Virus record (IMG/VR): IMGVR_UViG_3300017917_000952
Span: 1 to 64,000 of that record
Length of the DNA stretch: 64,000 nt
Direction: 5' to 3' (one strand)
The position numbers were made by a program, and so were the translations under genes. Each line of letters starts with the position of its first letter. Position 1 is the first letter of the stretch. The notes under the pieces are model-generated. The model saw nothing but the letters and a program-made list of their open reading frames with translations. It was not told the origin of the DNA and did no database searches. This document shows positions 3,065 to 62,330 of the stretch, piece after piece.

Positions 3065-3843
3065 CACAAGAAAGATTAGATACTAGACAGTCCTATTTCT
3101 ACAGGGATCATACCGGGATACGAAGAAGATACGGAATATACATGCCTGCTATTGATAGATTCCTGCATGTGTCAGAACAAGATTTATGGATGAGTCTCGA
3201 AACTGCTGAGATTCTAAGTTCCAAAGTACAAACTATGCTATATGTGCTGCCCCCTGGTTACATAAAAGTTCCCGAGTATACCGAACTTATTAATAATCAA
3301 AACTGTCTCAATTGGGGCATCTATGACAAGTCAAAATTAAAGATAGGTTCCGGCAGTGCGCTAGGTGCCAGACAGACTCCTATTATAGGTATGCTTTATC
3401 CTGATGATCGATTAGAAGAACATCAGTCTCTTCCAGAAGACTTTATCGAAGATAGTTCTATACTAATAGGTTTGAAAGACTATGCAGATTATGTATATCG
3501 AAGAGTTTTAGGAATTAGCATTGCAGTGAATTTTTATAATCCGTATTTCTCAAAGAAATTTATAGAAAAATATATCGACAATGATTGGGTAGAAAATAAA
3601 GAAAATTCAGCAGACCCTTCCTTTTCAAAAGGTATTGAATTTGAAATTAAGAAAATACTTTACCAGTGCAACTCTAAGGAAGAAGCCGAAGAAGCAATTA
3701 CTAATTTCTGGCTCGAAAATTATAGAAACGTAGGATTTATTATGGTAGGATATTATAAGGTAATCGGAGAAAGAATCCCAGAAAAACTAAGACCATACGC
3801 TTCAAATATTCACTATCTTAACCATTCAGTGTGGGTCATATAA
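3061..3843 (+). CDS. Hypothetical protein, coupled to the downstream PP-loop ATPase gene
   Basis: 260-aa ORF overlapping both neighbours; no motif recognised. Confidence 0.7.
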   Translation: MTQERLDTRQSYFYRDHTGIRRRYGIYMPAIDRFLHVSEQDLWMSLETAEILSSKVQTMLYVLPPGYIKVPEYTELINNQNCLNWGIYDKSKLKIGSGSALGARQTPIIGMLYPDDRLEEHQSLPEDFIEDSSILIGLKDYADYVYRRVLGISIAVNFYNPYFSKKFIEKYIDNDWVENKENSADPSFSKGIEFEIKKILYQCNSKEEAEEAITNFWLENYRNVGFIMVGYYKVIGERIPEKLRPYASNIHYLNHSVWVI

Positions 3844-5102
3844 TGCTTAATATAAACGATACACTTTATTTTTCAAGCCATGTTGTGAATTGGTATACTA
3901 GAGATACTTGGGATAAGGTATACAAAAACGTCCCTCCAGACGGTCAATGGTACCTAAAGGTGTACGAAAAGGTCTTACCTAATCGATTAATAACAAGGAA
4001 TGGGGAGTGGACTACTCCGTGGCCCCAGGAACTAATTCCTAAATTTAAGATGCCCGAGTACGATCCTTACTTTAGTAAATCGTTCGAACAGGTGACAGAT
4101 GAAAACGCTCTACGGATAAGGGATAGAATTCTCCAAGGAGAAAAGTTTGCCGTCATGTATTCGGGGGGTATTGATAGTACACTAGTTCTTTCATCGTTGA
4201 TTAAAAATCTTAGCAGTGAAGAATTAGAAAATGTAACTGTAGTTTGTAGTGGAGAAAGCATTGCCGAGAACCCTGTGTTCTATAGTAAGTTCATTCACGA
4301 AAAAATGAAAACCCTAGATTCTAAACGACACAAATATGATGACCTGATTAATCTAGGTTTGACTCCTATTATTTCAGATGAAGGAGATTGTATTTTTGGA
4401 ACACTTATCGGGCTCAATATGTACAACAGTTTTGATGCCTTAGTTGATCACGTATCGGGTCCCGTAAAAGAAAATCTAAGGCTTCTAAAAGATAAAATTA
4501 GCGATCCCAGTGTTCATTACAGTACATTTAAAGACCTAATTATTAAATTTTTGGATTTACCGCATTCACCGACATTTGGTAGAATTCTGTACGACAAATA
4601 TGATCATAATATAAGAACTGCAACAGTTCCTGTTCATAGTCTCCATGATTTTTTCTGGTGGTTAATTTTCAACGTTAAATATTACAATTGTTCCGTTAGG
4701 GGTGCAATATATATCAACGATACTATAGATATCAACACAGCCGTTCACAGAATCCATAATTGGTTTAATGATGAAGATTACCAACGATGGAGTATGGCAA
4801 ACAATAACAATGGAACAAAAATTAAAAAAAGTATCCTCAGTTATAAAACGGCGGCTAAAGAATATATCTACTCCGTTGATAACAATATTTGGTACAGAAC
4901 CTTTAAGACAAAATTAGAGTCCCTGTGGAATATAAGTAACTTGCAAAATGTACAGAATATTCCGATGGAAAAAAGGCCTGTAGCAAGGATAGCAGTTAAA
5001 AAAGAAAACTGGGAATTGGTGCATCTTACTGACCCGGGGGTGGTTGAGTATTTTACTCATCATGCATCAAATTATAAAATAGATTGGACAGACATCAAAT
5101 GA
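3831..5102 (+). CDS. PP-loop ATPase (asparagine synthase C-domain / adenine nucleotide alpha-hydrolase-like)
   Basis: MYSGGIDST PP-loop and SDEGDCIFG; no N-terminal glutaminase Cys. Confidence 0.7.
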   Translation: MGHIMLNINDTLYFSSHVVNWYTRDTWDKVYKNVPPDGQWYLKVYEKVLPNRLITRNGEWTTPWPQELIPKFKMPEYDPYFSKSFEQVTDENALRIRDRILQGEKFAVMYSGGIDSTLVLSSLIKNLSSEELENVTVVCSGESIAENPVFYSKFIHEKMKTLDSKRHKYDDLINLGLTPIISDEGDCIFGTLIGLNMYNSFDALVDHVSGPVKENLRLLKDKISDPSVHYSTFKDLIIKFLDLPHSPTFGRILYDKYDHNIRTATVPVHSLHDFFWWLIFNVKYYNCSVRGAIYINDTIDINTAVHRIHNWFNDEDYQRWSMANNNNGTKIKKSILSYKTAAKEYIYSVDNNIWYRTFKTKLESLWNISNLQNVQNIPMEKRPVARIAVKKENWELVHLTDPGVVEYFTHHASNYKIDWTDIK

Positions 5103-6004
5103 AAAAATTTTTAGCAACCTTATTATTAGCAACTACAGCATTTGTGGCACATGCTAAAGAAAATATTACAATTTTCTATGCATGGGGTCCAGGTGACTCT
5201 GTAGCAAACTATCATCGCACTATCGCTGCTGAAGCAAACAAAATTCAAGACAAATACAATTTTATCTTTGATACCAAGCCAGGCGCAGGTGGTGCAATCG
5301 CATCTAACCACGTACTTAATACTCCTAACAGTGTATTGGCACATAGCACAGCATTTTTTGTGCGTCCTGTAGTGTTCCCTAACGAAAGTTATGATTTAAC
5401 AAAATACAAAGAACAATATGTTCACTGCATGGCCCCAATGGCTGTGACTAGTACAAAGTATAAAACTGTAAAAGATGTACCTGCCAACGCTAGTGTAGGT
5501 ATTAGCGGCCTAGGTGTTACTACACACTTAGCAGCACTAGAACTAAAGAAACGTTATCCGGATTTAAATATCGTTCCTTTTAAATCTACCAACGATAGTA
5601 TGTTAAGTATGGTAAGCGGTCAAACTGATCTACATATTGGATTTATCAGCGAAGCAGAACAATGGAGTAAAGAAAACTCTAACAGTGATCGTAAGGTAAA
5701 TGTTTTAGGTATTACTGGATCAAAAGTTGTTAATGGTTACCAACCGTTGGTTCGTCAAGGCTTCGACGCTAGTTTTGCCGACATGAATGTTGGACATCAT
5801 CTCCTAGTACCAACAACAGTCAGCGAAGAAAAGCGCAAAGAGTTTCACGCCATTTTTGCTCGTGCAGCCCAGGCTCCTAGCGTTCGTGCTGCCTATGCAG
5901 TTGACTACTGCGAACCACAGGCTGTTACCTATGACGGTTTAGACAAGTTCTTCTTGTTCCATACAAACTATTGGAAGAAGTTAGCATCTGCGGTTAAACT
6001 ATGA
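5084..6004 (+). CDS. Bug/TctC-like tripartite tricarboxylate transporter substrate-binding protein
   Basis: Signal peptide (MKKFLATLLLATTAFVAHA, likely start about 5099), KPGAGGAIA, GVTTHL, VPFKS. Confidence 0.8.
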   Translation: MDRHQMKKFLATLLLATTAFVAHAKENITIFYAWGPGDSVANYHRTIAAEANKIQDKYNFIFDTKPGAGGAIASNHVLNTPNSVLAHSTAFFVRPVVFPNESYDLTKYKEQYVHCMAPMAVTSTKYKTVKDVPANASVGISGLGVTTHLAALELKKRYPDLNIVPFKSTNDSMLSMVSGQTDLHIGFISEAEQWSKENSNSDRKVNVLGITGSKVVNGYQPLVRQGFDASFADMNVGHHLLVPTTVSEEKRKEFHAIFARAAQAPSVRAAYAVDYCEPQAVTYDGLDKFFLFHTNYWKKLASAVKL

Positions 6005-6894
6005 TTAAGAAATTAATTATTGGAGTTCTAGGGGCATTGGCTATTTCGGCCAATGCTGCCGAAACTATTAAGGTATACAGTCCTTACAGTGCGAGCCACA
6101 GCGGTACTCCTGCATTGTTACGAGTGTTAGACCAAGCAAACGCAAATCAAAATATCTATAAATTCGTTCCAGAATTTAAACCGGGCGGAAATCAGATCAT
6201 CGCTGTAAAAAGTGTAGATGCAAATAGCCTGGCAATTATTGCACCTGCGTTTGTTGAGAATGTAGAATCGGGTAAACTTAATGAGTCTGACTATGTTCCA
6301 GTTTATGCACTCGGTGATGCCTGCTGGGCTGTGATCACAAACGGACCTTTAGAAGGTGCTAAGGAAGTTACAGTCGGCGGGGTTGGATTTGGCAATGCTG
6401 CACACTTAACAGCACTAGCATTAGGCGAGAAGTTTAAGTTTAACGTTCGTTATATTGTTTTTAGATCTAACAACGATGCACTGGTTAACATGACTGGAAA
6501 CAACGGTGTAGAATTTGTTGTTGAAAAATACGAAAGTTACGAAGGATTAAAAACTAAAAATCCTAATCTAAGAGTTATTGCTGCTAGTTGTCCTAAGAGA
6601 TTACCCCAGGCACCAAAAGTAAAAACACTCAAGGAAATGGGAATAGAAGCACCCTATGTCTTCAACATCATTGTATCTAACAGAGAAATGCCCAGTGGTC
6701 GTAGGTTAGCAATTTCAAAAATCTTAAATGACGCTACTCTAGCACTAGGCGAAGAAGAAATTTTTAAAATCTCTGCAATGCGTCCTCCTGTGTTCGATGG
6801 TGTCACTGCTGAAGATTTTTATGTAAAATCTACAGATCTTGTCAAAAATCTTCAGAAAAAGTATAGGTCTAAGATTGAAGAATCCAAAAAGTAA
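6001..6894 (+). CDS. Bug/TctC-like substrate-binding protein (divergent)
   Basis: Signal peptide ...AISANA, KPGG, GFGNAAHL, KRLPQAPKVKTLKEMG. Confidence 0.75.
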   Translation: MIKKLIIGVLGALAISANAAETIKVYSPYSASHSGTPALLRVLDQANANQNIYKFVPEFKPGGNQIIAVKSVDANSLAIIAPAFVENVESGKLNESDYVPVYALGDACWAVITNGPLEGAKEVTVGGVGFGNAAHLTALALGEKFKFNVRYIVFRSNNDALVNMTGNNGVEFVVEKYESYEGLKTKNPNLRVIAASCPKRLPQAPKVKTLKEMGIEAPYVFNIIVSNREMPSGRRLAISKILNDATLALGEEEIFKISAMRPPVFDGVTAEDFYVKSTDLVKNLQKKYRSKIEESKK

Positions 6895-6931
6895 CTAAAT
6901 ATATGAGCATGAAAGGTTCATGCTCATTTTT
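6895..6931 (+). terminator. Terminator hairpin directly downstream of a late-promoter-like CTAAATA
   Basis: ATGAGCATGAA-AGG-TTCATGCTCAT (6903-6927) plus T run; CTAAATA at 6895-6901. Confidence 0.75.
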
Positions 6932-6956
6932 AACGTTATAAAATGGAGCCTAAACA

Positions 6957-7904
6957 ATGACAAAAAAGCACGTAAAATGGGTTATCGCCCATGAGCCTAT
7001 TGGATTATTCCTAAAGGTAGCAGAGCGTTTTGCTAAGGAAGTAAACGAGCAGACCAACGGTATGTTCGATATCGAAGTTCTTTCTCTAAGCGATTATTCT
7101 GCAAAGTACAATGATGGTAAGAAAATTACCAAAGACGACCTAATGAAGTTAGTAGATACTGGCGCAATCGAAATGAGCCACATCTACACAACATGGTTAG
7201 CAGACTACAACAAAGATCTACACGCATTAGATCTACCTTTCTTATTCCGTGATCACGCACACGCTGACGCAGTTCTAGAAGGCGAAATCGGTGCAGAGCT
7301 TCTAGCAGGTGTTTCTAAGAACAGCAACATCAAGGCTATGAGTTTCACATATAGCGGTGGCTATCGTGTTGTTCCTGCAAACTTTGCAGCAGACACAGTA
7401 GAAGCATGGCAAGGTAAGAAAGTTCGTACCAGCCGTAGCCCAGTTGCAGTCGACACATTCAAACTGCTAGGCGCACAACCTTTTGAAGGTATTGCTTTAG
7501 AAGAAATGAATCAGGCTGCTGACCAAGGTATTATTGAAGCAGGCGAGAGCACATACGTTCGCGTATTCCCTCTAGACCAGCATAAGAGCTTCGAAGTTGT
7601 TAACGACACAGCACACAGCCTATTCTTAACAAGCATTATTGTTAACCAAGATTTCATGGCTCAGTTCAGCCAAGAAGTTCAAGAAGTTCTTGCAACAGCC
7701 GCATTCAATGCAGCACGTCAAGAGCGTCGCGAAAGTGTTGCTAACATTCCTGAAATCCTAGAACTTTGCGAAAAAGAAGGTGTTCAGGTTGTTAAGATGA
7801 GCGCAGAAGAAGAGTGCAAGTTCAAGGCAATCACAAGTCAGGTTTATGACATGTATGCCGACTATTTCACTCCCGGCTTAGTCCAGAAGATTCAGTTACA
7901 GTAA
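6957..7904 (+). CDS. dctP: TRAP transporter DctP-family substrate-binding protein lacking a signal peptide
   Basis: FAKEVNEQTNG, ALDLPFLFRD, GKKVRT with the conserved Arg, GIIEAGE; GGAG RBS at 6945-6948. Confidence 0.85.
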   Translation: MTKKHVKWVIAHEPIGLFLKVAERFAKEVNEQTNGMFDIEVLSLSDYSAKYNDGKKITKDDLMKLVDTGAIEMSHIYTTWLADYNKDLHALDLPFLFRDHAHADAVLEGEIGAELLAGVSKNSNIKAMSFTYSGGYRVVPANFAADTVEAWQGKKVRTSRSPVAVDTFKLLGAQPFEGIALEEMNQAADQGIIEAGESTYVRVFPLDQHKSFEVVNDTAHSLFLTSIIVNQDFMAQFSQEVQEVLATAAFNAARQERRESVANIPEILELCEKEGVQVVKMSAEEECKFKAITSQVYDMYADYFTPGLVQKIQLQ

Positions 7905-7921
7905 TCTGTACTTAATCAAGT

Positions 7922-7942: not shown

Positions 7943-7957
7943 CTTACGAGTATACCC

Positions 7958-7969: not shown

Positions 7970-8569
7970 ATGTGGATGCCTGTTGATTTTAAAGAAATTG
8001 GAAAAATAGATCCGGAAATATTAAATCCGGTTATAGAACTATTTGATACAATAAACTGGAATGATTTTTCATACAGACGTCCAGAACCTAAACTGCGTGC
8101 CGGAAAATTACTGGCTTTGCCTTACCTGTTATACAAATATGATCATCCTGTTTATACCGAAGAGCAGCAGATGATAATTAAGGCCGTGGAACCAGTAGTA
8201 GATGAGATTATTAAACTATTCCCCGGTTATGTAAAAGTTCGCGGAGAAATTGCAACATTATTACCGGGGGTTGAATTACCTTTACATACTGATATTGTTT
8301 GGTTTCATAAGTATTGTAGGCGAATACACATTCCTATAATAACTAACAAGGACTGTTACCAACAATTTGAAAATAGAACTTCTCATTTAGAGTTTGCAAA
8401 AATATACGAGATTAATAATAGAATAATGCACGGTGCTGGTAATCTCGGAAACAGCCAACGCATACACTTAATCCTTGACTTGCTCAGTGACAACATCTAT
8501 AATATAATTGATAAAAAAGTATATCAACTTATGACGGCGCTGCCAAAAAATGAAGTCAAAATTTATTAA
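7970..8569 (+). CDS. Aspartyl/asparaginyl beta-hydroxylase-like 2OG-Fe(II) oxygenase
   Basis: LPLHTD (HxD), RRIHIPIITN, EINNRIMHGAGN, RIHLILD. Confidence 0.8.
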   Translation: MWMPVDFKEIGKIDPEILNPVIELFDTINWNDFSYRRPEPKLRAGKLLALPYLLYKYDHPVYTEEQQMIIKAVEPVVDEIIKLFPGYVKVRGEIATLLPGVELPLHTDIVWFHKYCRRIHIPIITNKDCYQQFENRTSHLEFAKIYEINNRIMHGAGNLGNSQRIHLILDLLSDNIYNIIDKKVYQLMTALPKNEVKIY

Positions 8570-9098
8570 CGCATATATGAATGTGGCAAAAGAGTTTGCC
8601 AATCTAAGCCATGCACGACGATTACACGTCGGTGCTATTGTAGTCAAAGACGACCGTATCATCAGCATCGGCTACAACGGTATGCCTGCCGGTTGGGATA
8701 ACGACTGTGAATACAAAGATTACTGCCTAAGCAAAGATCTCAATGGAAATTATTTTCCAGGGGCGGAAGAAGAATATCCGTTTGTAGAAGAAGAACACGG
8801 TCCATATTACGAGTATACTCGTCGGTACCGTCTTAAAACCAGACCAGAGGTATTACATGCAGAATCAAACGCTATTGCAAAACTGGCGAAGTCTAATGAC
8901 AGTGGTGATGGGGCTGACTTATTTGTTACTCACAGTCCTTGTATCGAGTGTGCCAAACTCATTTATCAGTCAGGCATTCGTCGTGTTTATTTTGGTGAAC
9001 ACTATCGCGACGATGCTGGGATTGAATTCCTCAAGAAGTCGGGCGTGGAGGTAGTACAACCCCAACTAGGTGAATCCGAGGAACCTCAGAGCAATTAA
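8550..9098 (+). CDS. dCMP deaminase
   Basis: VGAIVVKD, GYNG, HAESNAI and SPCIECAK zinc motifs. Confidence 0.93.
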   Translation: MKSKFINAYMNVAKEFANLSHARRLHVGAIVVKDDRIISIGYNGMPAGWDNDCEYKDYCLSKDLNGNYFPGAEEEYPFVEEEHGPYYEYTRRYRLKTRPEVLHAESNAIAKLAKSNDSGDGADLFVTHSPCIECAKLIYQSGIRRVYFGEHYRDDAGIEFLKKSGVEVVQPQLGESEEPQSN

Positions 9099-9570
9099 TA
9101 AATGTGTGCTTCTTTGTTGTATCTACATAGTAACTAGTGCCGTCAGCGGGCATGTGCTCTATAGAATTCTGTTCCGGAAAAATCATTAAACATTGGGGAT
9201 TAGTAATCACTGGTAAATGTATCCTAGGATACGGATCAGAATGTATGCTGTAGCAGGCCCTGGGATTCATGTACATTAATCTTGTTCTAACAATCCTATA
9301 CTCACTAAGTGATTGCAACCATTGATCAACAAAACCGCCCCGTAGTTTAGGGTGAATAAATTTATACTGGGGCTCTACTATCATTCCTCCGGTTTTTCTT
9401 ATTCTGCCGGTTGACTCGTAGAACTGCTCTATGCTATCATTGTTAGGATCTTTCACCTGCAGGCCTAACTGCATAACGTTTTCTCTAAACGGAAAATTTT
9501 TGATTAGGTCGTTTATTTCGCTAACTAAGTTATAGAAATTCTCAAACTTCTTGATAGGCGTACAGATCAT
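9031..9570 (-). CDS. Aspartyl/asparaginyl beta-hydroxylase-like 2OG-Fe(II) oxygenase
   Basis: YSIHSD, RIHLPVITN, DTTKKHTFIN, RIHLV. Start placed at 9570, 5 nt after TTAAATA on the minus strand. Confidence 0.75.
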   Translation of the reverse strand: MICTPIKKFENFYNLVSEINDLIKNFPFRENVMQLGLQVKDPNNDSIEQFYESTGRIRKTGGMIVEPQYKFIHPKLRGGFVDQWLQSLSEYRIVRTRLMYMNPRACYSIHSDPYPRIHLPVITNPQCLMIFPEQNSIEHMPADGTSYYVDTTKKHTFINCSEVPRIHLVGVVLPPRPTS

Positions 9571-9609
9571 ATCAATATTTAATAACATTCTAACATAAGG
9601 AAAAAATAG

Positions 9610-10536
9610 ATGAACTTAAAACCCCTAGTTGCAGCACTAGTTACTGCATTTACACTTCAAGTCGGCATTGCTAATGCAGAATTTAATCCTGTAGGTAAAC
9701 AGGTTAATGTTATCATTCCGTTTGCGCCAGGCGGCGGAGTAGATCAGACATTTAGACATCTTCAGACTTATGCTTCAAAGAAAGGCGTTAATCTTGTCGC
9801 AATTTATAAACCGGGTGCAGAAGGGCTGATCGCAATGAGCGAATTAGTTACCAAACCTGCAGACGGAATGACCGTTAGTGTTACTACAGCAGGCGTTATT
9901 GCCAATTACCGATTAAAGAATCCGTCTACAGATGTAGTTGCTATCTCTGGTATTCGAGACAGTATCATGGCCTTGGTTGTTAGTAATAAGAGCCAAATTG
10001 AAAGTCTAGACCAATTAGACAAAGATCTTAAAGAAGGTAAAAAACTAAATGTAGGATATGGTGCACCAGGGCAGCAGATGTTCTTAGAGCAGTTCTTTGA
10101 ATTAGCAAAGGCAAAGAAAGGCGTTGCCATGGTTCCTTATAAGGGCGGCGGGCCGGTTGTTACTGACCTACTAGGCGGGCATATTGATGTTGCAGCAGTA
10201 CCGTTATCAATTGTTAAGGCACATATCGATTCTGGAAAAGTAAAATTAGTAGGATTAGCCAGCAGAGCAAAGATAGAAGGTTATGATTCTACTCCGCTAA
10301 TGAAGGCCAAGTATCCAAAATGGGAAGAGTTTGATAACTTTGCAGTTGTTGCCGAAAAAGGCACAGACAAAGAAGCCATTAATTGGTGGTCTAATTTCTT
10401 AAAAGATTATATCAATGACGAATCTGTTAAGAAGGATTTTGTCAAAGACATGACTGTACCTGTCGAGTTTGGTGCAACTAACCTAGAAAAAACAATTCAG
10501 TCTAGCATGAATAGACTTAAAAAGAATGGAAATTAA
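9610..10536 (+). CDS. Bug/TctC substrate-binding protein
   Basis: Signal peptide, IIPFAPGGGVD, KPGAEG, VPYKGGGPVVTDLLGGHID. Confidence 0.9.
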   Translation: MNLKPLVAALVTAFTLQVGIANAEFNPVGKQVNVIIPFAPGGGVDQTFRHLQTYASKKGVNLVAIYKPGAEGLIAMSELVTKPADGMTVSVTTAGVIANYRLKNPSTDVVAISGIRDSIMALVVSNKSQIESLDQLDKDLKEGKKLNVGYGAPGQQMFLEQFFELAKAKKGVAMVPYKGGGPVVTDLLGGHIDVAAVPLSIVKAHIDSGKVKLVGLASRAKIEGYDSTPLMKAKYPKWEEFDNFAVVAEKGTDKEAINWWSNFLKDYINDESVKKDFVKDMTVPVEFGATNLEKTIQSSMNRLKKNGN

Positions 10537-11862: not shown

Positions 11863-13293
11863 ATGCAGATTGTAATTTTAACCGGCGGAACTGATAACCG
11901 AAGATTTCTAAGGTACTTAGGTCCTTATCAAATAGCATGGTGGATGCGTGAACATGGATATTCTGTTCAGGTACTAGATTTTTTATTTTTTCTTCCTAAG
12001 GTGGAGAGAATAAATCTCCTAAGAAAATTTATAACAAAAGAAACAAAAGTAGTTTCAGTTGCCCCCTTTGCATACTTGGACTGGCATCACGACAGTGCTC
12101 TGGCTCCTATTATAAGTTTATTCCAAGACATAAAATACGAATTTCCTTGGGTCAAAATATCTGTAGGCGGGCAGTTTGCTACTAATTTTTTAAAGAAAAA
12201 AGTTTATACAAGACTAAAGTATAAGGTTGATGCAGTATTCCAAGGACCAGGAGAACATTCTTATCTAGACTATTGTAACTACATTTTTGGAAAGTCAGAT
12301 AAACACCCGGCATTCAAACTTATAGATGACCATAAAGTATTCGAATCCTCAGTAGAGTATGATGTACAAAACTGTAGAATGAGATTTTCTACTCAAGATT
12401 TTATTCTACCCGGAGAAGCATTACCAATCGAATTAAGTCGTGGATGTATTTTCAAATGTGCATTCTGTCAGTATCCTAACTTAGGCAAAGACAAAGACGA
12501 CTTCAACAGGAAGATTGAGAATATCCGAGATACCATGATTCATAATTATGAAAATTTCGGGACCACAGAATATTACATAGCAGACGATACAATTAACTCA
12601 CATAGGCAACGGACTAAAGATCTGCACGAAATGTCTAAAACATTACCTTTCAAATTAAATTACATAGGGTATGTAAGATTAGACCTGTTAGACATTTGGC
12701 CCGAGCAGCAAGAGATATTGCCAGAGTCGGGACTGGTTAGTTGCCACTTTGGAATAGAATCACTAGATCCTTACTCTTGCAAACAGATAGGCAAAGGTTG
12801 GGGAGCGAAGAATCACAAAATATGGATTCCTAAGATCGCAGAAATGTGGAAAGATACTGTGTCAATAAGATGTTCATTAATTGCAGGCCTTGGGAAAGAA
12901 ACAGAAAAAGACTGGAATGAAACAATGGAGTGGTTTAAAACTACCGGTGTAAAAGATTGGTTCTATAACCTACTGGTCCTAAGGAAAGAAATTGACCTAA
13001 GTCTTTTTGAAAAGAATCCCGAAAAGTACGGTTACAAATTTGATAGCAAAGGTAATTGGTATACAGATACAATGACCTATTATAGAGCAAAGGAATGGCA
13101 AACACTTAACTACTATAGTAATCTGTCTTTAAGATATGCTACCACATGGGATTACATAGGACTAAGAAACTTAGGATTCAGCAAAGAACAACTTAATACT
13201 GAAAAGTTTGGGTCCATGATTAAAGCCGTTGCAGCAAGAACTCAAGCCCGAGACTTTGCTAAACGTTACTACCAACTGGCAATGAGTTATTAA
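11863..13293 (+). CDS. B12-binding radical SAM protein
   Basis: SRGCIFKCAFC CxxxCxxC motif, N-terminal cobalamin-binding-like domain (ISVGG), DDT, GIES, LIAGL. Confidence 0.85.
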   Translation: MQIVILTGGTDNRRFLRYLGPYQIAWWMREHGYSVQVLDFLFFLPKVERINLLRKFITKETKVVSVAPFAYLDWHHDSALAPIISLFQDIKYEFPWVKISVGGQFATNFLKKKVYTRLKYKVDAVFQGPGEHSYLDYCNYIFGKSDKHPAFKLIDDHKVFESSVEYDVQNCRMRFSTQDFILPGEALPIELSRGCIFKCAFCQYPNLGKDKDDFNRKIENIRDTMIHNYENFGTTEYYIADDTINSHRQRTKDLHEMSKTLPFKLNYIGYVRLDLLDIWPEQQEILPESGLVSCHFGIESLDPYSCKQIGKGWGAKNHKIWIPKIAEMWKDTVSIRCSLIAGLGKETEKDWNETMEWFKTTGVKDWFYNLLVLRKEIDLSLFEKNPEKYGYKFDSKGNWYTDTMTYYRAKEWQTLNYYSNLSLRYATTWDYIGLRNLGFSKEQLNTEKFGSMIKAVAARTQARDFAKRYYQLAMSY

Positions 13294-14210
13294 GGCAGTT
13301 TGCCGTCTTTTAGATATTTAGAAAAGCACAATCTATTAGATCCTGTTCCTCGATTGTACTCTGTAAACTTATCTGTAGAAGTTGCGAAAAATACACACTT
13401 AGTCGGATTCACTCCTAACTGATCACTAAACATTTCCTGAGTATTTCTATAGGTATTATAGTTGTAATCGGGACTGTATTTTTCAATTAGTTTTTCACCA
13501 ACAGCGGCTCCTAAACGATTTACATATTTGTTTTTGTTGTAAACAAACAAAGGATCATCATTATCTAGTCGTGTTAACCTCATTCCTATTCTAAGATGTT
13601 GTACAGGAAAGTTTTTGCTTAGACTAAAAACTATTTCTTCAATACATTGATAATTAAAATCAAATTTTACATTACCGCATACACCAAAATAGCAACAGTC
13701 TACTAATACAGGAACATTTAGTTTTTCACAGACAGATAAAATATCTTCCATTAAGGGATTTTCTGCTCCGTTATCGGCGAAAGGTAAACTAAAAATTACA
13801 ACATCGTCTGCACGGATAGCATCGTCTTCGATAACTGCAACTCTATCAAAGTATGCTTTACCTGATGCAATGTGATACATGTACTCGCCTTTGAAATAAC
13901 GAAGGCGACGTTCTTTATGTTTTAGATAAAATTTATCAAATGCTTCCGTTGTTCCGTTACTGAAAGCAAAGGCATTGAAATTTTCTAGTCCTGCAATTTG
14001 ATTGTTCTTTGTTGATAAGATCCATTCTTTATATTTTCTGCAGAACCGATCGTGAACTTCAACATCATTTAAGCAACCTTCGGCAACAACAGTATTAATA
14101 ATACCTGCAACTTCTTGTTCTAGTTCTTCGTTTTTTACACAATGTACGCTACCGAAGGGTAGGCTTTTTAATTTTAACAGTGCATTCCACTGTTCTTCTT
14201 TTTGAGTCAT
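13290..14210 (-). CDS. PLP-dependent fold-type I enzyme (aminotransferase/decarboxylase-like)
   Basis: GTTEAFD, VLVDCCY (PLP Asp), FSLSKNF (Schiff-base Lys), LRIGMR. Confidence 0.65.
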   Translation of the reverse strand: MTQKEEQWNALLKLKSLPFGSVHCVKNEELEQEVAGIINTVVAEGCLNDVEVHDRFCRKYKEWILSTKNNQIAGLENFNAFAFSNGTTEAFDKFYLKHKERRLRYFKGEYMYHIASGKAYFDRVAVIEDDAIRADDVVIFSLPFADNGAENPLMEDILSVCEKLNVPVLVDCCYFGVCGNVKFDFNYQCIEEIVFSLSKNFPVQHLRIGMRLTRLDNDDPLFVYNKNKYVNRLGAAVGEKLIEKYSPDYNYNTYRNTQEMFSDQLGVNPTKCVFFATSTDKFTEYNRGTGSNRLCFSKYLKDGKLP

Positions 14211-15337
14211 TATTCGCTCACAAATATTTTCTTGGTAGGAATTAATCTATAACCTTTGTTCCACCACATTAGGTTAGGACGCAACTGCGACAGATGCTCT
14301 GCGGCCATATATTCGTATCTGTCTTTAAACTCTTTTAGTTCAGGGTACTGCCATAACCAGAAGTGTTTATCAGATCTATTAAGTCTAAGAGGTTTCTCTG
14401 CCTGGAATCTATCTGTCCAATTAGTATATAGAACATGGCGTAAAAACTTTTGTTGTTCTTTTTGTTTGAAGTAAAACATTTCAAGACTGTTCTTTACATC
14501 TCTTGTAAATGCTAATTCTGATAATTCTTTTTCTCTCTTGAATACTTTAATTGCTGCATTGGCCATTTCAAACGCAAGAATAGGAAATTTCGGTGTCCAG
14601 TAAAAATATTCCGTGCCGTAGATATTACCAGGATAAGGTGTTCCCATTGTAACAGCAGAGTCACAGAACCACATATAATTTTTATTGTCTTCGAAATAGG
14701 TCTTAGGTTTGTCAACACCGTATATCGATGCTACTTTCTTACCTTGCTCAGACAATTTAATTTCATTTGGACTCCATACTGCTAAAGAAGTAACTTCTAC
14801 ATCGTGCCAGTGATTAACTAGGCCAAATATTTCTTCTTGACCGATGGATGTTCTATCTTTAAACCAATCAACAATTTCAATTTTTATGTTAGGGTGTTTT
14901 TGAGCGACTTCTTCCAGGACCGGTTTGATAGCGTAGTCCCATTCACTCAAATAATTTACCGCGGTTTTTTCTTCTGTATTAGGTACGTAGATACCTCGGT
15001 CAATAACATCCGACGCCCATTTTACACAAATTTCATCTAGATGTATTCCGTTATCTAAAAATGAACGTAATACATTATAACTGTCAGCGCCGCCCGAGAA
15101 GTATAAAATAAGATAATCGTAACTGTCTCGCAACTGCTGAGCACGTTGTTTATATAGTTCATTGAGACTAAATTTACCAATCAATGATCTATCAAAATTT
15201 TGCCACACATCATCAAAAAATCTATACTGAACAGTGTTGTTTGTTTTAGTTGCATAGAGCAAAGCCTGATATTTGTTTATAAACTTTTGATCAGCGACTT
15301 CCCAATATCCTTGAGGGTAATTTTCTATAAATTGCAT
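14210..15337 (-). CDS. PP-loop ATPase (asparagine synthase-like)
   Basis: LYFSGGADS PP-loop, GVDKP, EYFYW; TATAAATA 8 nt upstream on the minus strand. Confidence 0.7.
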   Translation of the reverse strand: MQFIENYPQGYWEVADQKFINKYQALLYATKTNNTVQYRFFDDVWQNFDRSLIGKFSLNELYKQRAQQLRDSYDYLILYFSGGADSYNVLRSFLDNGIHLDEICVKWASDVIDRGIYVPNTEEKTAVNYLSEWDYAIKPVLEEVAQKHPNIKIEIVDWFKDRTSIGQEEIFGLVNHWHDVEVTSLAVWSPNEIKLSEQGKKVASIYGVDKPKTYFEDNKNYMWFCDSAVTMGTPYPGNIYGTEYFYWTPKFPILAFEMANAAIKVFKREKELSELAFTRDVKNSLEMFYFKQKEQQKFLRHVLYTNWTDRFQAEKPLRLNRSDKHFWLWQYPELKEFKDRYEYMAAEHLSQLRPNLMWWNKGYRLIPTKKIFVSE

Positions 15338-15397
15338 AGCAGTGATATTTATAGGCGGGTGTTTTGTAAAAGCATAAATATTGAAAAGGGGAACACC

Positions 15398-15769
15398 ATG
15401 CCATATATGATGTTAAAAGGAACATTTACACGACCAAACACAGATGTAGAATTTTTCGATGGGTCGGTTAATAGACCTGTCATGGAAGATATGCAGCAAA
15501 AGGGATTGATTATCGATCGCGGCAGTTATCTGTCAGAGGATCAATTGACCAAGACCCATTATTTCACTTCACAGATCGAAACGGCGTCAGATATTAATAT
15601 TGTTACCTCTGCTCTCAGAACTGATCCAAACTTCTATGAAATGCACATTGCATTTCAAGAGTACTGCGATCAACACGGAATTACCAGAGGACCGATTGTT
15701 ATTGAAGTTTACACTTCTGACTGGATTCTTATGAACACCATGAACTTTATGGTTGCTGATCTTTTCTAA
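15398..15769 (+). CDS. Hypothetical protein
   Basis: ATG 15398 with AAGGGG RBS and CATAAATA at 15373; the track start at 15200 overlaps the opposite-strand gene. Confidence 0.65.
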   Translation: MPYMMLKGTFTRPNTDVEFFDGSVNRPVMEDMQQKGLIIDRGSYLSEDQLTKTHYFTSQIETASDINIVTSALRTDPNFYEMHIAFQEYCDQHGITRGPIVIEVYTSDWILMNTMNFMVADLF

Positions 15770-18800: not shown

Positions 18801-19028
18801 ATGATTTTCACAGAACATAAAAGCCAAGTACACTCAATTCGTCAAGACGATCCAGAGTTTAAGATCGTAGACGGCTTTGCCGTACACCCCCGAGCAATGG
18901 TACATATTTTACCAGAATGTCCCTGGGAACTTAGAGACCAAATTAATTTTGCCATTGCCAAGGGCTATCTAAAATTGGTCGCCAACATTACGGAGCGTGA
19001 ACGTATTTTTATGGGCCTGACAAAATGA
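18801..19028 (+). CDS. Hypothetical protein
   Basis: 75-aa ORF directly after the promoter, ATGA-coupled to the next gene. Confidence 0.65.
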   Translation: MIFTEHKSQVHSIRQDDPEFKIVDGFAVHPRAMVHILPECPWELRDQINFAIAKGYLKLVANITERERIFMGLTK

Positions 19029-55024: not shown

Positions 55025-55780
55025 ATGAAGCATATATTTAGGTTAACTGAAAAATCAGTCCTGATCAACAGATATATTCTGTTATCAGGATTTCTCTTAT
55101 TGCTGTATTACGGAACACTAATTCACTGGCTCGTTGTTTTAGGTGTTTATCTAGTCAAGGGACTTATGGGTACTGCGGTTATTCACAGAGGACTTTCTCA
55201 CAGAGCCTTCAAAATGAATAAATTGGTTGAGAGATTGTTTGGAGGATTTTCTCTGTTAGGGACAAATTCTACTCCTATTTCATGGGTAGCAGTTCATCGA
55301 CAGCACCATAGATTTTCTGATCACCAAGGAGATTTACATAGTCCGCAAATATACCCTTATTGGGATGTTCAATTAATGAAGTTCCACGATCCTATAGATC
55401 TAACTTATGCTCCGGATTTAGTTCGTCAACCTTACTATACATGGCTTTTTAGATACCACTGGGCAATCAGTTATAGTATTGCCTTACTATTATTAATAAT
55501 TGATCCTATGCTACTTTTATGTGCGTGGCTTGCTCCAAATTTTATACAATCATATGCAGGAACTACTGTAAACGCACTTAACCATATTAATTTTGGTTAC
55601 AGAAATTTTGCTACCAAAGATAACAGCCATAACAACTGGATTACAGGAATCTTCTGTTTAGGTGAAGGATGGCATAACAATCACCACCACGACCCTGCAA
55701 ATCCAAACTTCGGAGTTAAATGGTGGGAGTTTGATTTAGGATATCAATTTGTAAAACTAATTCAACAAAAAACCGCATAG
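55025..55780 (+). CDS. Membrane fatty-acid (acyl-CoA delta-9 type) desaturase
   Basis: His boxes HRGLSH, HRQHH, GEGWHNNHH; WWEFD; hydrophobic helices. Confidence 0.92.
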   Translation: MKHIFRLTEKSVLINRYILLSGFLLLLYYGTLIHWLVVLGVYLVKGLMGTAVIHRGLSHRAFKMNKLVERLFGGFSLLGTNSTPISWVAVHRQHHRFSDHQGDLHSPQIYPYWDVQLMKFHDPIDLTYAPDLVRQPYYTWLFRYHWAISYSIALLLLIIDPMLLLCAWLAPNFIQSYAGTTVNALNHINFGYRNFATKDNSHNNWITGIFCLGEGWHNNHHHDPANPNFGVKWWEFDLGYQFVKLIQQKTA

Positions 55781-57979: not shown

Positions 57980-57980
57980 A

Positions 57981-59381: not shown

Positions 59382-59392
59382 AGGAAATACCA

Positions 59393-60016: not shown

Positions 60017-60017
60017 C

Positions 60018-60584
60018 ATGGCAGGATTAGTAGATTCAGTATTAGGATTACTTCGTAAAGAACCGAAGGACCCAGACGCACCAAAGCCGCCGGTGGGCAG
60101 TCGTAGCGAGCGAGAAGCAAAGATTAAAGATAAAGCAGGTCTAGTTATCAACGTCTTTGCATTATTGTTAGCCATTAACTCCTGGTATGGGGGTAAACTA
60201 TCGAGCACGGTATTAAACAATACTATTGCTGCAAACAATCAATGGTCTTGGTACCAGGCAAAGAACGTCCGAGAAGTTCTATACACAACTAGCGCCCTAG
60301 AAGCAAAGGTTCCTGAGAACAAAGCAAAGTTTGAGGCAGAAGCCGCACGTATGAATGCCGATAAGAAAGAAATCTTAGAAAAGGCTACCAAACTAGAAAA
60401 AGAACGCGACGAAGCAAAACTACGTAGCCCGTGGATTGGTTATGCTAATACTGCATATCAATTAGCGATTGTGTTACTGTCTGCGAGTATTCTTGCTGTC
60501 AGTATGCCTTTATTCTGGGGCAGTTTTGTAGTTGCTGGAATTGGCTTATTATTAAGCAGCCAAGGACTATTTCTCTGGCTTTAA
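60018..60584 (+). CDS. DUF4337-like membrane protein
   Basis: TM helix, ANNQWSWYQAK, coiled coil, two C-terminal TM helices. Confidence 0.7.
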   Translation: MAGLVDSVLGLLRKEPKDPDAPKPPVGSRSEREAKIKDKAGLVINVFALLLAINSWYGGKLSSTVLNNTIAANNQWSWYQAKNVREVLYTTSALEAKVPENKAKFEAEAARMNADKKEILEKATKLEKERDEAKLRSPWIGYANTAYQLAIVLLSASILAVSMPLFWGSFVVAGIGLLLSSQGLFLWL

Positions 60585-61456
60585 TTTATACCAAACTGGC
60601 TTTTAATTAGTCGCACAGGAACATTCCTAGAAACTACTTCCCCTAATTTTTGTCTTCGGGGAACAATGTAGTTTAGAGCTAGGTCTGTTCCTGTTATCTT
60701 TTCGAAGCCGTCATATTTCATCCTACGTGGCATTTCTGGCCAGTACTTATGATATACAGTTAGTTTTTCGGGGCTAGTTGTTGGCCACACTGTAACAAAA
60801 TATTCAGGATCAGTTAACATAAAATTTATTAACCCTTGGCTAAAGTAGGAAGCCATAATTTCAGAATTTTGCCAATAGAAATATGGAAAGTGTTTTTGGT
60901 TATTATTCTTTAACCAATCAAGACACATAAACTCATCTATTTTAAAATTCAAACATATTTCACCGTCTACAGTAAAGAACGGCGACGGGCCGCCGCCGAG
61001 TACCGCAGTATATCCTAAAGATTCTGCAAGTTCAAAAAGATACAACTGTTGAAATCTAAAAGTTCTCCAAGTAACATAACCCTGTTCGATATATTTAGGA
61101 ATTTTGTTAATAACAAAATCTTCAAAGTCAAAGTCGATAACAATGTGTTTTAAATTCCTGTCTCGGCAAAATTTTATTGCCCAATCTACATCGTGATTGT
61201 TTGTTCCTTTTATGTGCCTTAAACTTAATGCAGTGAATTCAATATTGTTTTCTATAAATGCACGAGCAACTACTTCGCTATCGATGCCTCCGCTCATACA
61301 CAGTAATAAAGGTCTATCAGTTAGAGAACGTATTTGTTTGGCCGTTTCATATACTTCTTGTTTCCAGCCTAATAAAGGTCGAGTTACTGGCTTGAACTTA
61401 ATATCAAAAGTTCCATCAGCAGTATATGAATAATCAAAATTCACAATATCTTTCAT
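60581..61456 (-). CDS. PP-loop ATPase (asparagine synthase-like), paralogue A
   Basis: CMSGGIDSE PP-loop; clearly similar to 61458-62330. Confidence 0.7.
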   Translation of the reverse strand: MKDIVNFDYSYTADGTFDIKFKPVTRPLLGWKQEVYETAKQIRSLTDRPLLLCMSGGIDSEVVARAFIENNIEFTALSLRHIKGTNNHDVDWAIKFCRDRNLKHIVIDFDFEDFVINKIPKYIEQGYVTWRTFRFQQLYLFELAESLGYTAVLGGGPSPFFTVDGEICLNFKIDEFMCLDWLKNNNQKHFPYFYWQNSEIMASYFSQGLINFMLTDPEYFVTVWPTTSPEKLTVYHKYWPEMPRRMKYDGFEKITGTDLALNYIVPRRQKLGEVVSRNVPVRLIKSQFGIN

Positions 61457-61457
61457 T

Positions 61458-62330
61458 TTAAATTCCTAGTTGTTCTCTAATTAAAGATACAGGTATATAT
61501 TGAGATACCGGATCTCCTAATTCTTTCCTTCGTGGATGTACATAGTTAATAGTGAAATCGGCTGTTTTTAAATTTTCAAAGCCGTTAAACTTTTTTCGTC
61601 GTTTCATCTCGGGCCAATTTTTATGATACACAAACATTTTATCATAACTAGTATCATTGCCCCAAACGTTAACAAAATAAGAAGGATCTTTATGCATATA
61701 CTGTATTAACTTATCGTTTAGATAAGATGCATAAAGTTCAGAATTCTGCATATGAAAGAATGGAAAATGTAGTTTTTTGTTATTTTTCAACCATTCCACA
61801 CACATAAAAAAATCACTTTTAAAGTTTATACATATCTCGTTATTCTTAGTTATGTATGTCTGTTCTCCGCCACCTAAAACTGTGGTTCCTCCAAGAGATT
61901 CTGCTAGTTCAAAAAGGTATATCTGTTGAAATCTAAATGTGCGCCACGACCGATATCCTTGTTCTATATAGAAGGGAATATTATTTCTAATAAAGAAAGA
62001 AATATCAAAATCTACAATCTTATGAGGAATATTGTAGGCCTTACAAAATTCTCTAGCATAAACTATGTCGTGTTCATTAGTTCCAGCATTATGTCTGAGA
62101 GTTAATGCTGTAAATTCTATACCTGCTTTAATAAAACTTCTAGCAGCAACTTCACCGTCTATCCCGCCGCTTAGACATAGGAATAAAGGCTTGTCAGTAA
62201 GAGCTCTAATATTTTTTGCTGTTTGAATTAATTCACTTTTCCAATCTAACAGCGGGCGGCTTATGGGATTGAAATTTATCTTAAAGGTGCCGTCCTGGTT
62301 AAGTAGATAAGTAAAGTTTACATTATTCAT
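61458..62330 (-). CDS. PP-loop ATPase (asparagine synthase-like), paralogue B
   Basis: CLSGGIDGE; shares IEQGY.(S/T)WRTFRFQQ.YLFELAESLG with paralogue A. Confidence 0.7.
   Translation of the reverse strand: MNNVNFTYLLNQDGTFKINFNPISRPLLDWKSELIQTAKNIRALTDKPLFLCLSGGIDGEVAARSFIKAGIEFTALTLRHNAGTNEHDIVYAREFCKAYNIPHKIVDFDISFFIRNNIPFYIEQGYRSWRTFRFQQIYLFELAESLGGTTVLGGGEQTYITKNNEICINFKSDFFMCVEWLKNNKKLHFPFFHMQNSELYASYLNDKLIQYMHKDPSYFVNVWGNDTSYDKMFVYHKNWPEMKRRKKFNGFENLKTADFTINYVHPRRKELGDPVSQYIPVSLIREQLGI

What the first reader, a model, noticed from the sequence alone, without database searches (positions are those of the whole stretch)
3831..62330. Four SGGxD(S/G) PP-loop ATPases of an unassigned family, including a tandem duplicate
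Seen: YSGGIDS (3831-5102), FSGGADS (14210-15337), MSGGIDS (60581-61456) and LSGGIDG (61458-62330). The last two are adjacent paralogues with long shared blocks, inserted on the minus strand in the lysis region. None shows the Cys zinc cluster of QueC or a glutaminase domain. Two of the loci have a TAAATA box 8-9 nt before the ATG. Inference: an expanded, late-expressed family of adenylating enzymes with diversified substrates. The S-to-G change in one paralogue may mark subfunctionalisation.
Basis: partly seen in the sequence, partly recalled or inferred. Interest (0 to 1): 0.72.

Follow-up and report, generated by a model that had tools for sequence, protein, structure and literature searches.

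The report
Phage asparagine-synthetase-like enzymes lacking glutaminase
A freshwater jumbo phage carries four genes for stripped-down relatives of asparagine synthetase, from three old, virus-only families that sit inside phage metabolic gene islands; they probably use ATP to turn carboxylic acids into amides, but on what molecules is unknown.

Summary
Four intact ORFs carry SGGxD(S/G); they are the only four in the 207-kb virus record, where about 0.25 would be expected by chance. They are not one recently expanded family. They are three deep lineages: A (3843-5102), B (14210-15337) and C/D (60581-62330). All are AsnB-type PP-loop synthetase domains with no glutaminase domain, no zinc or Fe-S cysteines and no RNA-binding domain.

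A sits in a translationally coupled operon: acyl-CoA ligase, SDR, BKACE, unknown, A, then two TctC-like binding proteins. B is coupled to a PLP aminotransferase-fold gene. D and C fill a variable slot in the lysis module beside PanD.

C and D are old paralogues (58% identity; backbone proteins 80-99%). The S-to-G change predates their split and also occurs in single-copy genes. The more telling change is loss of the AsnB-Glu348-like residue in C.

The most likely function is ATP-dependent amide formation on small-molecule carboxylates. Substrates are unknown.

The parts
3843..5102 (+). PP-loop protein A, 419 aa from ATG 3843. P-loop SGGIDS at residue 107, acidic loop D179-E180-G181-D182, K355/K357 motif. 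AsnB-type synthetase fold with no glutaminase domain.
3061..3843 (+). 260-aa protein of unknown fold, translationally coupled to A through a TAATG overlap. It is a conserved upstream partner of family A.
   Evidence: It is 40% identical to the gene upstream of A in L018 and 36% to that in L016. No Pfam, Atlas or PADLOC match. The complex prediction gave no answer.
83..3064 (+). Three upstream operon genes: AMP-binding acyl-CoA ligase-like (83-1477), short-chain dehydrogenase (1458-2195) and beta-keto acid cleavage enzyme (2192-3064). Their starts and stops overlap.
   Evidence: Pfam. The same order is found upstream of family A in L018. ATGA overlaps confirmed.
5099..6894 (+). Two TctC-like periplasmic solute-binding proteins (5099-6004 and 6001-6894), coupled to A by ATGA overlaps. 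A hairpin with a T-run after 6894 ends the operon.
6957..7904 (+). DctP-type TRAP solute-binding protein. It recurs directly after family A in other phages.
   Evidence: Pfam E 5e-40. It is 72% identical to its L016 counterpart and 50% to that in L018, next to A in both.
14210..15337 (-). PP-loop protein B, 375 aa. P-loop SGGADS at residue 81, invariant Y206-G-x-D209-K210-P211, R321..K324. AsnB-type fold. No sequence-family match.
13290..14210 (-). 306-aa protein with a class I/II PLP aminotransferase fold, translationally coupled to B through a TAATG overlap. It is a conserved downstream partner.
   Evidence: Atlas score 0.99 to viral Aminotran_1_2 clusters. It is 59% identical to the gene after B in L019. 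Overlap confirmed.
15346..15353 (-). TATAAATA box 8 nt upstream of B's ATG.
61458..62330 (-). PP-loop protein D, 290 aa. P-loop SGGIDG at residue 54. It keeps the acidic residue (GGGE156) and the R-x-K-x2-G-F-E motif. It is the first gene of the D-C unit.
60581..61456 (-). PP-loop protein C, 291 aa. Canonical P-loop SGGIDS at residue 55, but Pro157 where the family has Glu or Asp. It scores above the Pfam Asn_synthase gathering threshold. Its ATG lies 1 nt after D's stop.
62340..62346 (-). ATAAATA box 9 nt upstream of D's ATG. It overlaps the ATG of the divergently transcribed PanD gene.
62345..62716 (+). Aspartate 1-decarboxylase (PanD), divergent from D. It is present in the same slot in L024 and L011 but absent in L022.
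   Evidence: Pfam E 3e-36. Contexts.

Best explanation
The four genes encode standalone AsnB-type PP-loop synthetase domains, that is, asparagine-synthetase-like enzymes without the glutamine-hydrolysing domain. They belong to three ancient lineages (A, B, C/D) of one largely virus-restricted superfamily.

Shown here: intact genes under purifying selection; a canonical or near-canonical pyrophosphate-binding loop; confident models whose best structural matches are AsnB, beta-lactam synthetase and TsnB9; profile links among the three lineages; conserved operon partners.

Inferred: each enzyme binds ATP at the P-loop and adenylates a carboxylate of a small molecule. Free ammonia or a substrate amine then attacks to give an amide, releasing AMP and PPi.

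A probably works on a carboxylate handled by its own operon (acyl-CoA ligase, SDR, BKACE, TctC and DctP binding proteins, which suggest imported organic acids). B probably works together with its coupled PLP aminotransferase-fold partner on an amino- or keto-acid-like compound. D and C are alternative or successive cassettes of a hypervariable slot in the lysis module, sometimes joined to PanD; beta-alanine or aspartate is a candidate substrate there. B and the D-C unit are probably transcribed from the phage's ATAAATA-type promoters, together with virion genes.
For: The motif is non-random and the genes are intact.

Sequence: C matches Pfam Asn_synthase at E 7e-8, 32.9 bits against a cut-off of 21. 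The rest of the hits are weak and confined to the P-loop region.

Superfamily links: hhalign gives A-C/D 92.6% and B-C/D 87.9%. Intermediate paralogues hit two or three of the profiles.

Catalytic motifs: A has TADEGDCIFG, which lines up without gaps with AsnB SGEGSDEVFGG and sits in the same strand-loop-helix position. The hhalign of the C/D profile with AsnB ends exactly at VLSG|E. E or D occupies that position in 111 of 150 representatives. The R-x-K-x2-G-x-E motif, like AsnB's RQK449EQF, is nearly universal.

Selection and context: dN/dS for C against its orthologue is 0.04. Partners are conserved and genes are coupled.
Against: No substrate, product or ATPase activity has been shown for any member. 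Sequence similarity to AsnB is weak for A and D and absent for B at the sequence level. Foldseek E-values against PDB are only about 1e-3. The Lys449 equivalence is a motif resemblance only; I could not superpose coordinates. C lacks the acidic residue that serves as general base in AsnB, and D has Gly at P-loop position 6. Neighbour types around distant family members vary, with no single dominant partner. PanD linkage holds in the window and its duplicate locus L011 plus one of the two sister phages with this backbone; it was not seen in other backbones. No expression data could be found.
Confidence: 0.6

Rival explanations
1. They are nucleic-acid-modifying PP-loop enzymes, like TilS, MnmA, ThiI or QueC. 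They would adenylate a base of host tRNA or phage DNA, or a 7-deazaguanine precursor, and then substitute it with an amine, ammonia or sulfur.
For: The best PDB sequence hits of the C/D profile are TilS (4e-5), ThiI (5e-4) and NadE. D passes the tRNA_Me_trans cut-off marginally (22.4 against 20.6 bits). FolE and a PTPS/QueD-like gene lie in the window.
Against: Those hits cover only the P-loop region, about 60-110 residues. There is no THUMP, PUA or TilS C-terminal domain. There is no CxxC zinc or Fe-S motif and no paired catalytic cysteines. QueC scores fall below its cut-off. The 207-kb record has no TGT/DpdA, no QueE-sized radical SAM enzyme and no tRNA genes, though it is only about 58% complete. 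Whole-chain structural matches favour AsnB-type enzymes.
Confidence: 0.12
2. They act on peptides or proteins, in the manner of lasso-peptide cyclases or other macrolactam synthetases. They would adenylate an Asp/Glu side chain or a C-terminus of a phage or host protein and form an isopeptide or amide. In related phages they could be part of a RiPP-like tailoring island with radical SAM, ATP-grasp, Asp/Asn hydroxylase and GNAT genes.
For: Lasso cyclases and beta-lactam/carbapenam synthetases are AsnB-type enzymes that need no active glutaminase, and these are among the best structural matches. There is a weak NCBIfam hit to a macrolactam cyclase. The islands are rich in radical SAM, GARS_A ATP-grasp, Asp_Arg_Hydrox, GNAT and PP-binding genes.
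Against: No precursor peptide, leader peptidase or B-protein was recognised next to any of the four. The macrolactam-cyclase score is 15.5 bits against a cut-off of 300. The operon partners of A and B are small-molecule enzymes and solute-binding proteins.
Confidence: 0.15
3. C, and perhaps D, is a catalytically impaired pseudoenzyme. After divergence it would serve as a regulatory or structural partner rather than as an independent ligase.
For: C has Pro157 where 74% of the family has Glu or Asp, the position aligned with AsnB Glu348. D has Gly at P-loop position 6. Two paralogues in related phages lack the P-loop altogether. AsnB-type enzymes are usually dimers (established knowledge).
Against: A C-type gene with the same GGGP stands alone in the slot of a sister phage (L022) and is under strong purifying selection, with dN/dS 0.04. 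A D-like gene with SGGIDG/GGGE also stands alone in L024. Beta-lactam synthetase has Tyr at the corresponding position and is active (established knowledge). All other family-invariant residues are kept in both C and D.
Confidence: 0.1

Closest known systems
Asparagine synthetase B / human ASNS (Pfam PF00733, class II glutamine amidotransferase)
   Different: There is no N-terminal Ntn glutaminase domain and no Cys1, so glutamine cannot be the nitrogen source. The proteins are 290-420 aa against about 550. Sequence identity is 6-13% in the structural alignments. The N- and C-terminal elaborations are family-specific. C lacks the Glu348 equivalent.
Beta-lactam synthetase (BLS), carbapenam synthetase (CarA) and the hydroxyamidotransferase TsnB9
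   Different: Those enzymes keep a (degenerate) N-terminal domain and come from actinomycete or proteobacterial natural-product clusters. The phage proteins lack that domain, and their gene clusters are unrelated.
NH3-dependent NAD+ synthetase (NadE), LarE and the ATP-pyrophosphatase domain of GMP synthetase
   Different: The matches cover only the core of about 130-190 residues. The substrate-binding elements of NadE, LarE and GMPS are not shared. LarE's sacrificial Cys and the GMPS dimerisation domain are absent.
AsnB-like uronamide amidotransferases of O-antigen clusters (WbpS/WbtH type; recalled from memory, not tested here)
   Same: This would be a precedent for AsnB homologues that amidate a sugar carboxylate near a UDP-sugar dehydrogenase. 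The window has a UDP-glucose dehydrogenase-like gene at 19025-19879 and a carbamoyltransferase at 16531-17985.
   Different: Those enzymes keep the glutaminase domain. No direct comparison was made, and the sugar genes here are not adjacent to any of the four.

Membership tests
PP-loop ATP pyrophosphatase superfamily | SGGxDS pyrophosphate-binding loop after the first strand of a Rossmann-like alpha/beta domain | tested here: met
   The motif is present in all four, with SGGIDG in D. In the A and B models it lies between a strand and a helix (E105-109/H114-126 in A; E75-79/H85-94 in B). The core matches GMPS, NadE, LarE and AsnB.
PP-loop ATP pyrophosphatase superfamily | Cleavage of ATP to AMP + PPi through an adenylated substrate | not testable with these tools
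   Needs an enzyme assay.
AsnB-type synthetase domain (Pfam PF00733 Asn_synthase) | Score above the Pfam gathering threshold (21 bits) | tested here: inconclusive
   C scores 32.9 bits (met). D scores 16.8 and A 12.1 (not met). B has no hit.
AsnB-type synthetase domain (Pfam PF00733 Asn_synthase) | Whole-domain fold closest to AsnB, BLS, CarA or TsnB9 rather than to other PP-loop enzymes | tested here: met
AsnB-type synthetase domain (Pfam PF00733 Asn_synthase) | Acidic loop equivalent to AsnB S-G-E348-G-S-D351-E after the central strand | tested here: inconclusive
   A has the invariant D179-E-G-D182, which aligns without gaps to the AsnB motif. D has GGGE156, C has GGGP157 (acid lost) and B has Y-G-V-D209-K-P, whose equivalence is unclear. 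This rests on motif alignment, not on coordinate superposition.
AsnB-type synthetase domain (Pfam PF00733 Asn_synthase) | Catalytic lysine equivalent to AsnB Lys449 / BLS Lys443 | tested here: inconclusive
   Conserved candidates exist: K247 in C/D (132 of 150 representatives), K324 in B (invariant) and K355/K357 in A (invariant). Sequence alignment to AsnB does not reach this region.
Glutamine-dependent asparagine synthetase (AsnB proper) | N-terminal Ntn-type glutaminase domain with catalytic Cys1 | tested here: not met
   The P-loop is at residue 54-107 against 235 in E. coli AsnB. Residue 2 is L, Q, K or N. There is no GATase Pfam hit.
QueC (7-cyano-7-deazaguanine synthase) | QueC HMM above cut-off, a C-terminal Cys zinc cluster, and a preQ0 pathway context (QueD, QueE, and TGT/DpdA in phages) | tested here: not met
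   PF06508 scores are 20.1 (D) and 17.3 (C) against a cut-off of 22. There is no CxxC motif. FolE and a PTPS-like gene are present, but no TGT/DpdA or QueE-sized radical SAM enzyme is found in 207 kb.
tRNA PP-loop enzymes (TilS, MnmA, ThiI, TtcA/TtuA) | RNA-binding accessory domains, and catalytic Cys pairs or Fe-S cysteines | tested here: not met
   HMM and PDB hits are limited to the P-loop region. No accessory-domain hits and no Cys clusters were found. Each family has only one or two conserved Cys.
Lasso-peptide / macrolactam cyclases | Family HMM above cut-off, plus an adjacent precursor peptide and leader peptidase | tested here: not met
   NF033561 scores 15.5 bits against a cut-off of 300. 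No such neighbours appear among the annotated flanking genes. Very small ORFs were not examined.

The most novel reading that the evidence does not exclude
A virus-restricted superfamily of glutaminase-less AsnB-like ligases, together with membrane FA-desaturase-like oxygenases, LpxO/OlsC-type Asp/Asn hydroxylases, Rieske and radical SAM enzymes, GNATs, ATP-grasp ligases and acyl carrier proteins, forms modular and rapidly reshuffled biosynthetic islands in large aquatic phages. During infection these islands would make or remodel an amide-containing lipid or metabolite, for example aminolipid or envelope remodelling, or a phage-made natural product. The C/D slot in the lysis module would be one such exchangeable tailoring cassette.
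Probability: 0.2. Interest if true: 0.8.

Novelty: new variant of a known kind. Interest (0 to 1): 0.5.

Why it matters
Families A and B are widespread in aquatic metagenomes (at least 429 and 908 clusters at 90% identity). The C/D type has at least 2,211 clusters at 50% identity. None has a name, a Pfam or PHROG assignment (apart from weak PF00733 hits), or a homologue in 50,697 sequenced phage records. Placing them as glutaminase-less AsnB-type amide synthetases with conserved partners turns a block of viral dark matter into testable enzymes. The partners are an acyl-CoA ligase/SDR/BKACE/solute-binding operon for A, a PLP enzyme for B, and PanD for C/D. Their multiplicity (up to 7 in 17 kb) and the cassette-like turnover of the C/D slot suggest that phages diversify amide-forming chemistry much as they diversify host-interaction genes. 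If the substrates turn out to be host lipids, envelope components or imported organic acids, this would be a new class of auxiliary metabolic function in freshwater and marine phages. The families would also be a source of new ligases.

Tried and rejected
- blastn and tblastn of the loci and of A, B and C against 50,697 GenBank phage records found no match.
- PHROGs gave only phrog_16728 (unknown function) for C and D, at E about 1e-4.
- PADLOC defence models gave nothing meaningful.
- PDB sequence search with the B profile gave no hit.
- Foldseek alone against PDB was weak, E about 1e-3 with poor TM. A VIA-align second look was needed.
- hhalign of the family profiles against single-sequence E. 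coli AsnB covers only the N-terminal half in local mode. Global mode gave nonsense, so Lys449 could not be mapped by sequence.
- Complex prediction of A with its coupled upstream partner returned no answer; it counts neither for nor against binding.
- The Atlas search for A's partner found nothing.
- RNA-seq evidence: no run was listed.
- Neighbour census around 79 IMG/VR C/D-type loci found no dominant partner (FA_desaturase 6, Rieske 5, radical SAM 4, cupin 4). Many of these loci match only the P-loop region.
- Literature searches found no description of these families.
- Considered and rejected: chance motif occurrences; canonical QueC in a deazaguanine pathway; a recent tandem duplication.


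Full report
SOURCE. The window is the first 64 kb of a 206,751-bp linear IMG/VR virus record with 41% GC and a CheckV completeness estimate of 58%. Near-identical DNA occurs in pond, freshwater, estuary and aquaculture metagenomes. The record encodes ClpB-like, DnaJ, peptide deformylase, PhoH, clamp-loader and DnaE-type polymerase genes. This points to a large, probably jumbo, freshwater phage.

OBSERVATION. All four ORFs are present as described. SGGxD[SG] occurs four times among 519 ORFs of the whole record. All four are in this window, and residue shuffling gives 0.25. Profile HMMs of the three families find no further copy in the record. C and D are 58.5% identical, and D's stop lies 1 nt from C's start. 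None of the four has CxxC motifs or Cys2. The P-loops lie at residues 54-107, against 235 in E. coli AsnB, so there is no glutaminase domain. The true start of A is most likely ATG 3843: the family consensus begins there, and the ATG overlaps the upstream stop as TAATG.

PROMOTER-LIKE BOX. TATAAATA lies 8 nt before B's ATG and ATAAATA lies 9 nt before D's ATG; the latter overlaps the ATG of the divergent PanD gene. TAAATA lies within 40 nt upstream of 37 of 221 non-nested ORFs where 2.1 would be expected. It is mostly 3-9 nt from the start codon. The ORFs that carry it include genes of 2009, 1804, 1145, 991 and 661 aa and an Ig-domain protein, which are probably virion genes. So it is a genuine shared regulatory signal. 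That it marks late transcription is an analogy with T4-type late promoters and is untested; no RNA run was listed. A has no box because it is internal to an operon, and C is read through from D.

WHAT THE PROTEINS ARE: SEQUENCE. C matches Pfam Asn_synthase above threshold (E 7e-8, 32.9 bits against 21). D, A and B give only weak hits around the P-loop (tRNA_Me_trans, QueC, ThiI, NadE, LarE) or none at all. PHROGs gives only phrog_16728, of unknown function.

- AFDB fold clusters: for A the best hits are 'Asparagine synthetase domain-containing' proteins (E 1e-16, TM 0.66-0.73). For B the best hit is an unnamed-type protein of 363 aa (E 2e-16, TM 0.7), followed by Asn-synthetase-domain proteins.
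- ESM Atlas: the nearest clusters are 89-100% viral, followed by Asn_synthase clusters. B's model matches the 288-aa C/D-type viral cluster at TM 0.74 over 270 residues.

ONE SUPERFAMILY, THREE OLD LINEAGES. By BLAST, A, B and C/D share only 40-67 residues around the P-loop. Profile-profile comparison links C/D with A (92.6% probability, 150 columns) and with B (87.9%, 178 columns), but barely links A with B (26.7%). In related phage contigs, intermediate paralogues match two or three profiles. L014_2011 scores A1 4e-4, A2 4e-40 and A3 5e-6. L014_15689 and L023_971 match both A1 and A3. The families are large and unnamed: at least 429 clusters for A and 908 for B at 90% identity. A full HMMER scan with the C/D profile finds 2,211 clusters at 50% identity with E <= 1e-3, and 392 with E <= 1e-30. 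None of A, B or C has a match in 50,697 GenBank phage records. Family B was found once in 185,579 species genomes, on a 2-kb MAG contig. The C/D signature gives 152 confirmed stretches in IMG/VR.

EXPANSION IN OTHER PHAGES. Related contigs, several of them with T4-type markers (Gp23, gp59), hold more copies than this window. L014 has 7 in 17 kb, L018 has 5, L019 has 4 and L023 has 3 in 8.7 kb; two copies lack the P-loop. These copies sit among FA_desaturase, Asp_Arg_Hydrox, Rieske, radical SAM, GNAT, GARS_A ATP-grasp, PP-binding and AdoMet decarboxylase genes.

E. coli AsnB was fetched from NC_000913. It has SGGLDS at 235, GEGSDE at 348 and RQKEQ at 448, counting from Met1.
- A: the invariant T-A-D179-E-G-D182-C-I-F-G aligns without gaps to S-G-E-G-S-D-E-V-F-G and occupies the same strand-loop-helix position.
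- C/D: the hhalign with AsnB runs from the P-loop to VLSG|E. At the next position, 83 of 150 representatives have E and 28 have D.
- Residues E61, N86, D89, C97, R245, K247, G250 and E252 are nearly universal in the C/D type. R-x-K-x2-G-F-E resembles the AsnB Lys449 region.
- B has invariant Y206-G-x-D209-K210-P211 and R321-x-D-K324.
These patterns point to active adenylating enzymes but do not prove it.

CONTEXT OF A. Genes 83-6894 form one translationally coupled operon: AMP-binding ligase, SDR, BKACE, a 260-aa unknown, A, and two TctC-like binding proteins. ATGA or TAATG overlaps occur at 2192, 3061, 3843, 5099 and 6001, and a hairpin with a T-run follows 6894. A DctP binding protein follows. 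L018 has the same order: AMP-binding, SDR, BKACE, a C/D-like paralogue, the unknown, A, then DctP. L016 and L017 keep the unknown, A and DctP. The unknown partner has no detectable relatives with a known fold, and the complex prediction was uninformative.

CONTEXT OF B. B is coupled by a TAATG overlap to a 306-aa protein with a class I/II PLP aminotransferase fold (Atlas score 0.99). The pair is conserved in L019 (62% and 59% identity), where an Amidohydro_2 gene precedes it.

CONTEXT OF C/D. The backbone ClpB, Def, DnaJ, holin-like | slot | DUF4337, GH19, PhoH is conserved in two other phages. L022 has a single C-type gene and no PanD. L024 has PanD and a single D-like gene (SGGIDG/GGGE). The window and L011 have PanD, D and C. 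Backbone proteins are 80-99% identical. The slot genes are far more divergent: C against L022 is 82%, D against L024 is 60%, C against D is 58% and L022 against L024 is 58%. For C against its L022 orthologue, dN/dS is 0.04 and pS is 0.72, against 0.07-0.46 for ClpB, GH19 and PhoH. So the slot exchanges old, selected cassettes. The pair is not a recent in-place duplication.

ORDER OF CHANGES IN C/D. The tree has a well-supported clade of 12 sequences. Its states are consistent with an ancestral SGGIDS/GGGE, then S-to-G before the D / L024-type / C split, then loss of the Glu (to P or Q) in the lineage leading to C, then a reversal to Ser. This ordering is my inference from the tree. SGGxDG occurs in 13 of 142 representatives. 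Another, independent tandem pair (43% identity) occurs in L023.

MECHANISM. The best-supported reading has each enzyme binding ATP at the PP-loop and adenylating a carboxylate. With no glutaminase domain, free ammonia or a substrate amine then completes an amide. This is what NH3-dependent NadE does, and what BLS, CarA and TsnB9 do with non-glutamine nucleophiles (established knowledge of those families). The solute-binding proteins and the acyl-CoA ligase/SDR/BKACE genes suggest that A acts on an imported or beta-oxidised organic acid. B's PLP partner suggests amino/keto-acid chemistry. PanD suggests aspartate or beta-alanine for some C/D cassettes. These substrate ideas are inferences. The rival readings (base modification, peptide modification, pseudoenzyme) are weighed in their own sections.

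NOVELTY. No description of these families was found in the literature searched. They are new, divergent, virus-specific variants of a known enzyme kind rather than a new kind of system.

Noticed in passing
window 5099-6004, 6001-6894, 6957-7904, 9610-10536: The phage encodes four periplasmic solute-binding proteins: three TctC/Bug-like and one DctP/TRAP. No cognate membrane components were seen nearby. The phage may redirect host TTT or TRAP transporters to import particular organic acids. A TctC-rich host such as a betaproteobacterium is a guess.
   Followed up: partly
window 20191-20937, 20934-21953, 32259-32765: GTP cyclohydrolase I (FolE), an IMPDH/GMP-reductase-like gene and a PTPS/QueD-like gene are present. 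No TGT/DpdA, canonical QueC or QueE-sized radical SAM enzyme is found in the 207-kb record. This is either a partial deazaguanine or pterin pathway, or the remaining genes lie in the missing 42% of the genome.
   Followed up: partly
window 62345-62716: Aspartate 1-decarboxylase (PanD) is encoded inside the lysis module. Its ATG overlaps the promoter-like box of the divergent D gene. PanD is present or absent in the same slot of sister phages.
   Followed up: partly
whole record; examples at window 7970, 47540, 55025, 62331-62346: The ATAAATA box usually lies only 3-9 nt from the start codon, leaving little room for a Shine-Dalgarno sequence. The transcripts may be leaderless or have very short leaders, or the box may also act in translation initiation.
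   Followed up: partly
window 7970-8569 (+) and 9031-9588 (-): There are two Asp/Asn beta-hydroxylase-family (LpxO/OlsC-like) 2OG oxygenases, plus an FA_desaturase-like membrane di-iron enzyme at 55025-55780. Homologues recur, often in several copies, beside PP-loop paralogues in related phages. In L014 and L018 there is a repeated module of a PP-loop gene, a ~180-aa unknown and an FA_desaturase; L012 and L019 have the same three genes, but with the FA_desaturase on the opposite strand.
   Followed up: partly
window 8550-9098, 11863-13293, 16531-17985, 19025-19879: A dCMP deaminase, a large (476 aa) radical SAM enzyme, a NodU/CmcH-type carbamoyltransferase and a short UDP-glucose/GDP-mannose dehydrogenase-like gene lie in the same island. 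Possible roles are nucleotide, sugar or envelope tailoring; function unknown.
   Followed up: no
window 63.3-72.3 kb (L010 1-9050): A host-like proteostasis set lies beside the lysis genes: a ClpB-like AAA+ protein (756 aa), peptide deformylase and DnaJ. Among sister phages, the DUF4337 and holin-like genes flanking the slot are more divergent (64-84%) than the rest of the backbone (79-99%). This is consistent with a recombination hot spot.
   Followed up: partly
window 38702-44731: A 2009-aa protein gives only coiled-coil-type Pfam matches and is preceded by a TAAATA box. It may be a tape-measure or internal virion protein.
   Followed up: no
window 15200-15769 (+), 62682-63218 (-), 62808-63071 (+): These listed ORFs overlap better-supported genes or the B promoter region and look spurious.
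   Followed up: no
L016 15354-16436; L018 2501-3412: Two C/D-type paralogues in related phages have lost the SGGxDS motif (HMM E 2e-23 and 3e-13). They may be pseudoenzymes within the superfamily.
   Followed up: no
AFDB hits: The best or near-best AFDB cluster representatives for A (A0A1F3TQ24) and B (A0A1F3TQ25) have consecutive accessions. They are probably adjacent genes in one metagenome-assembled genome. A 590-aa protein (A0A2V3ISY1) also matches A at TM 0.71. The origin of these entries could not be checked.
   Followed up: no
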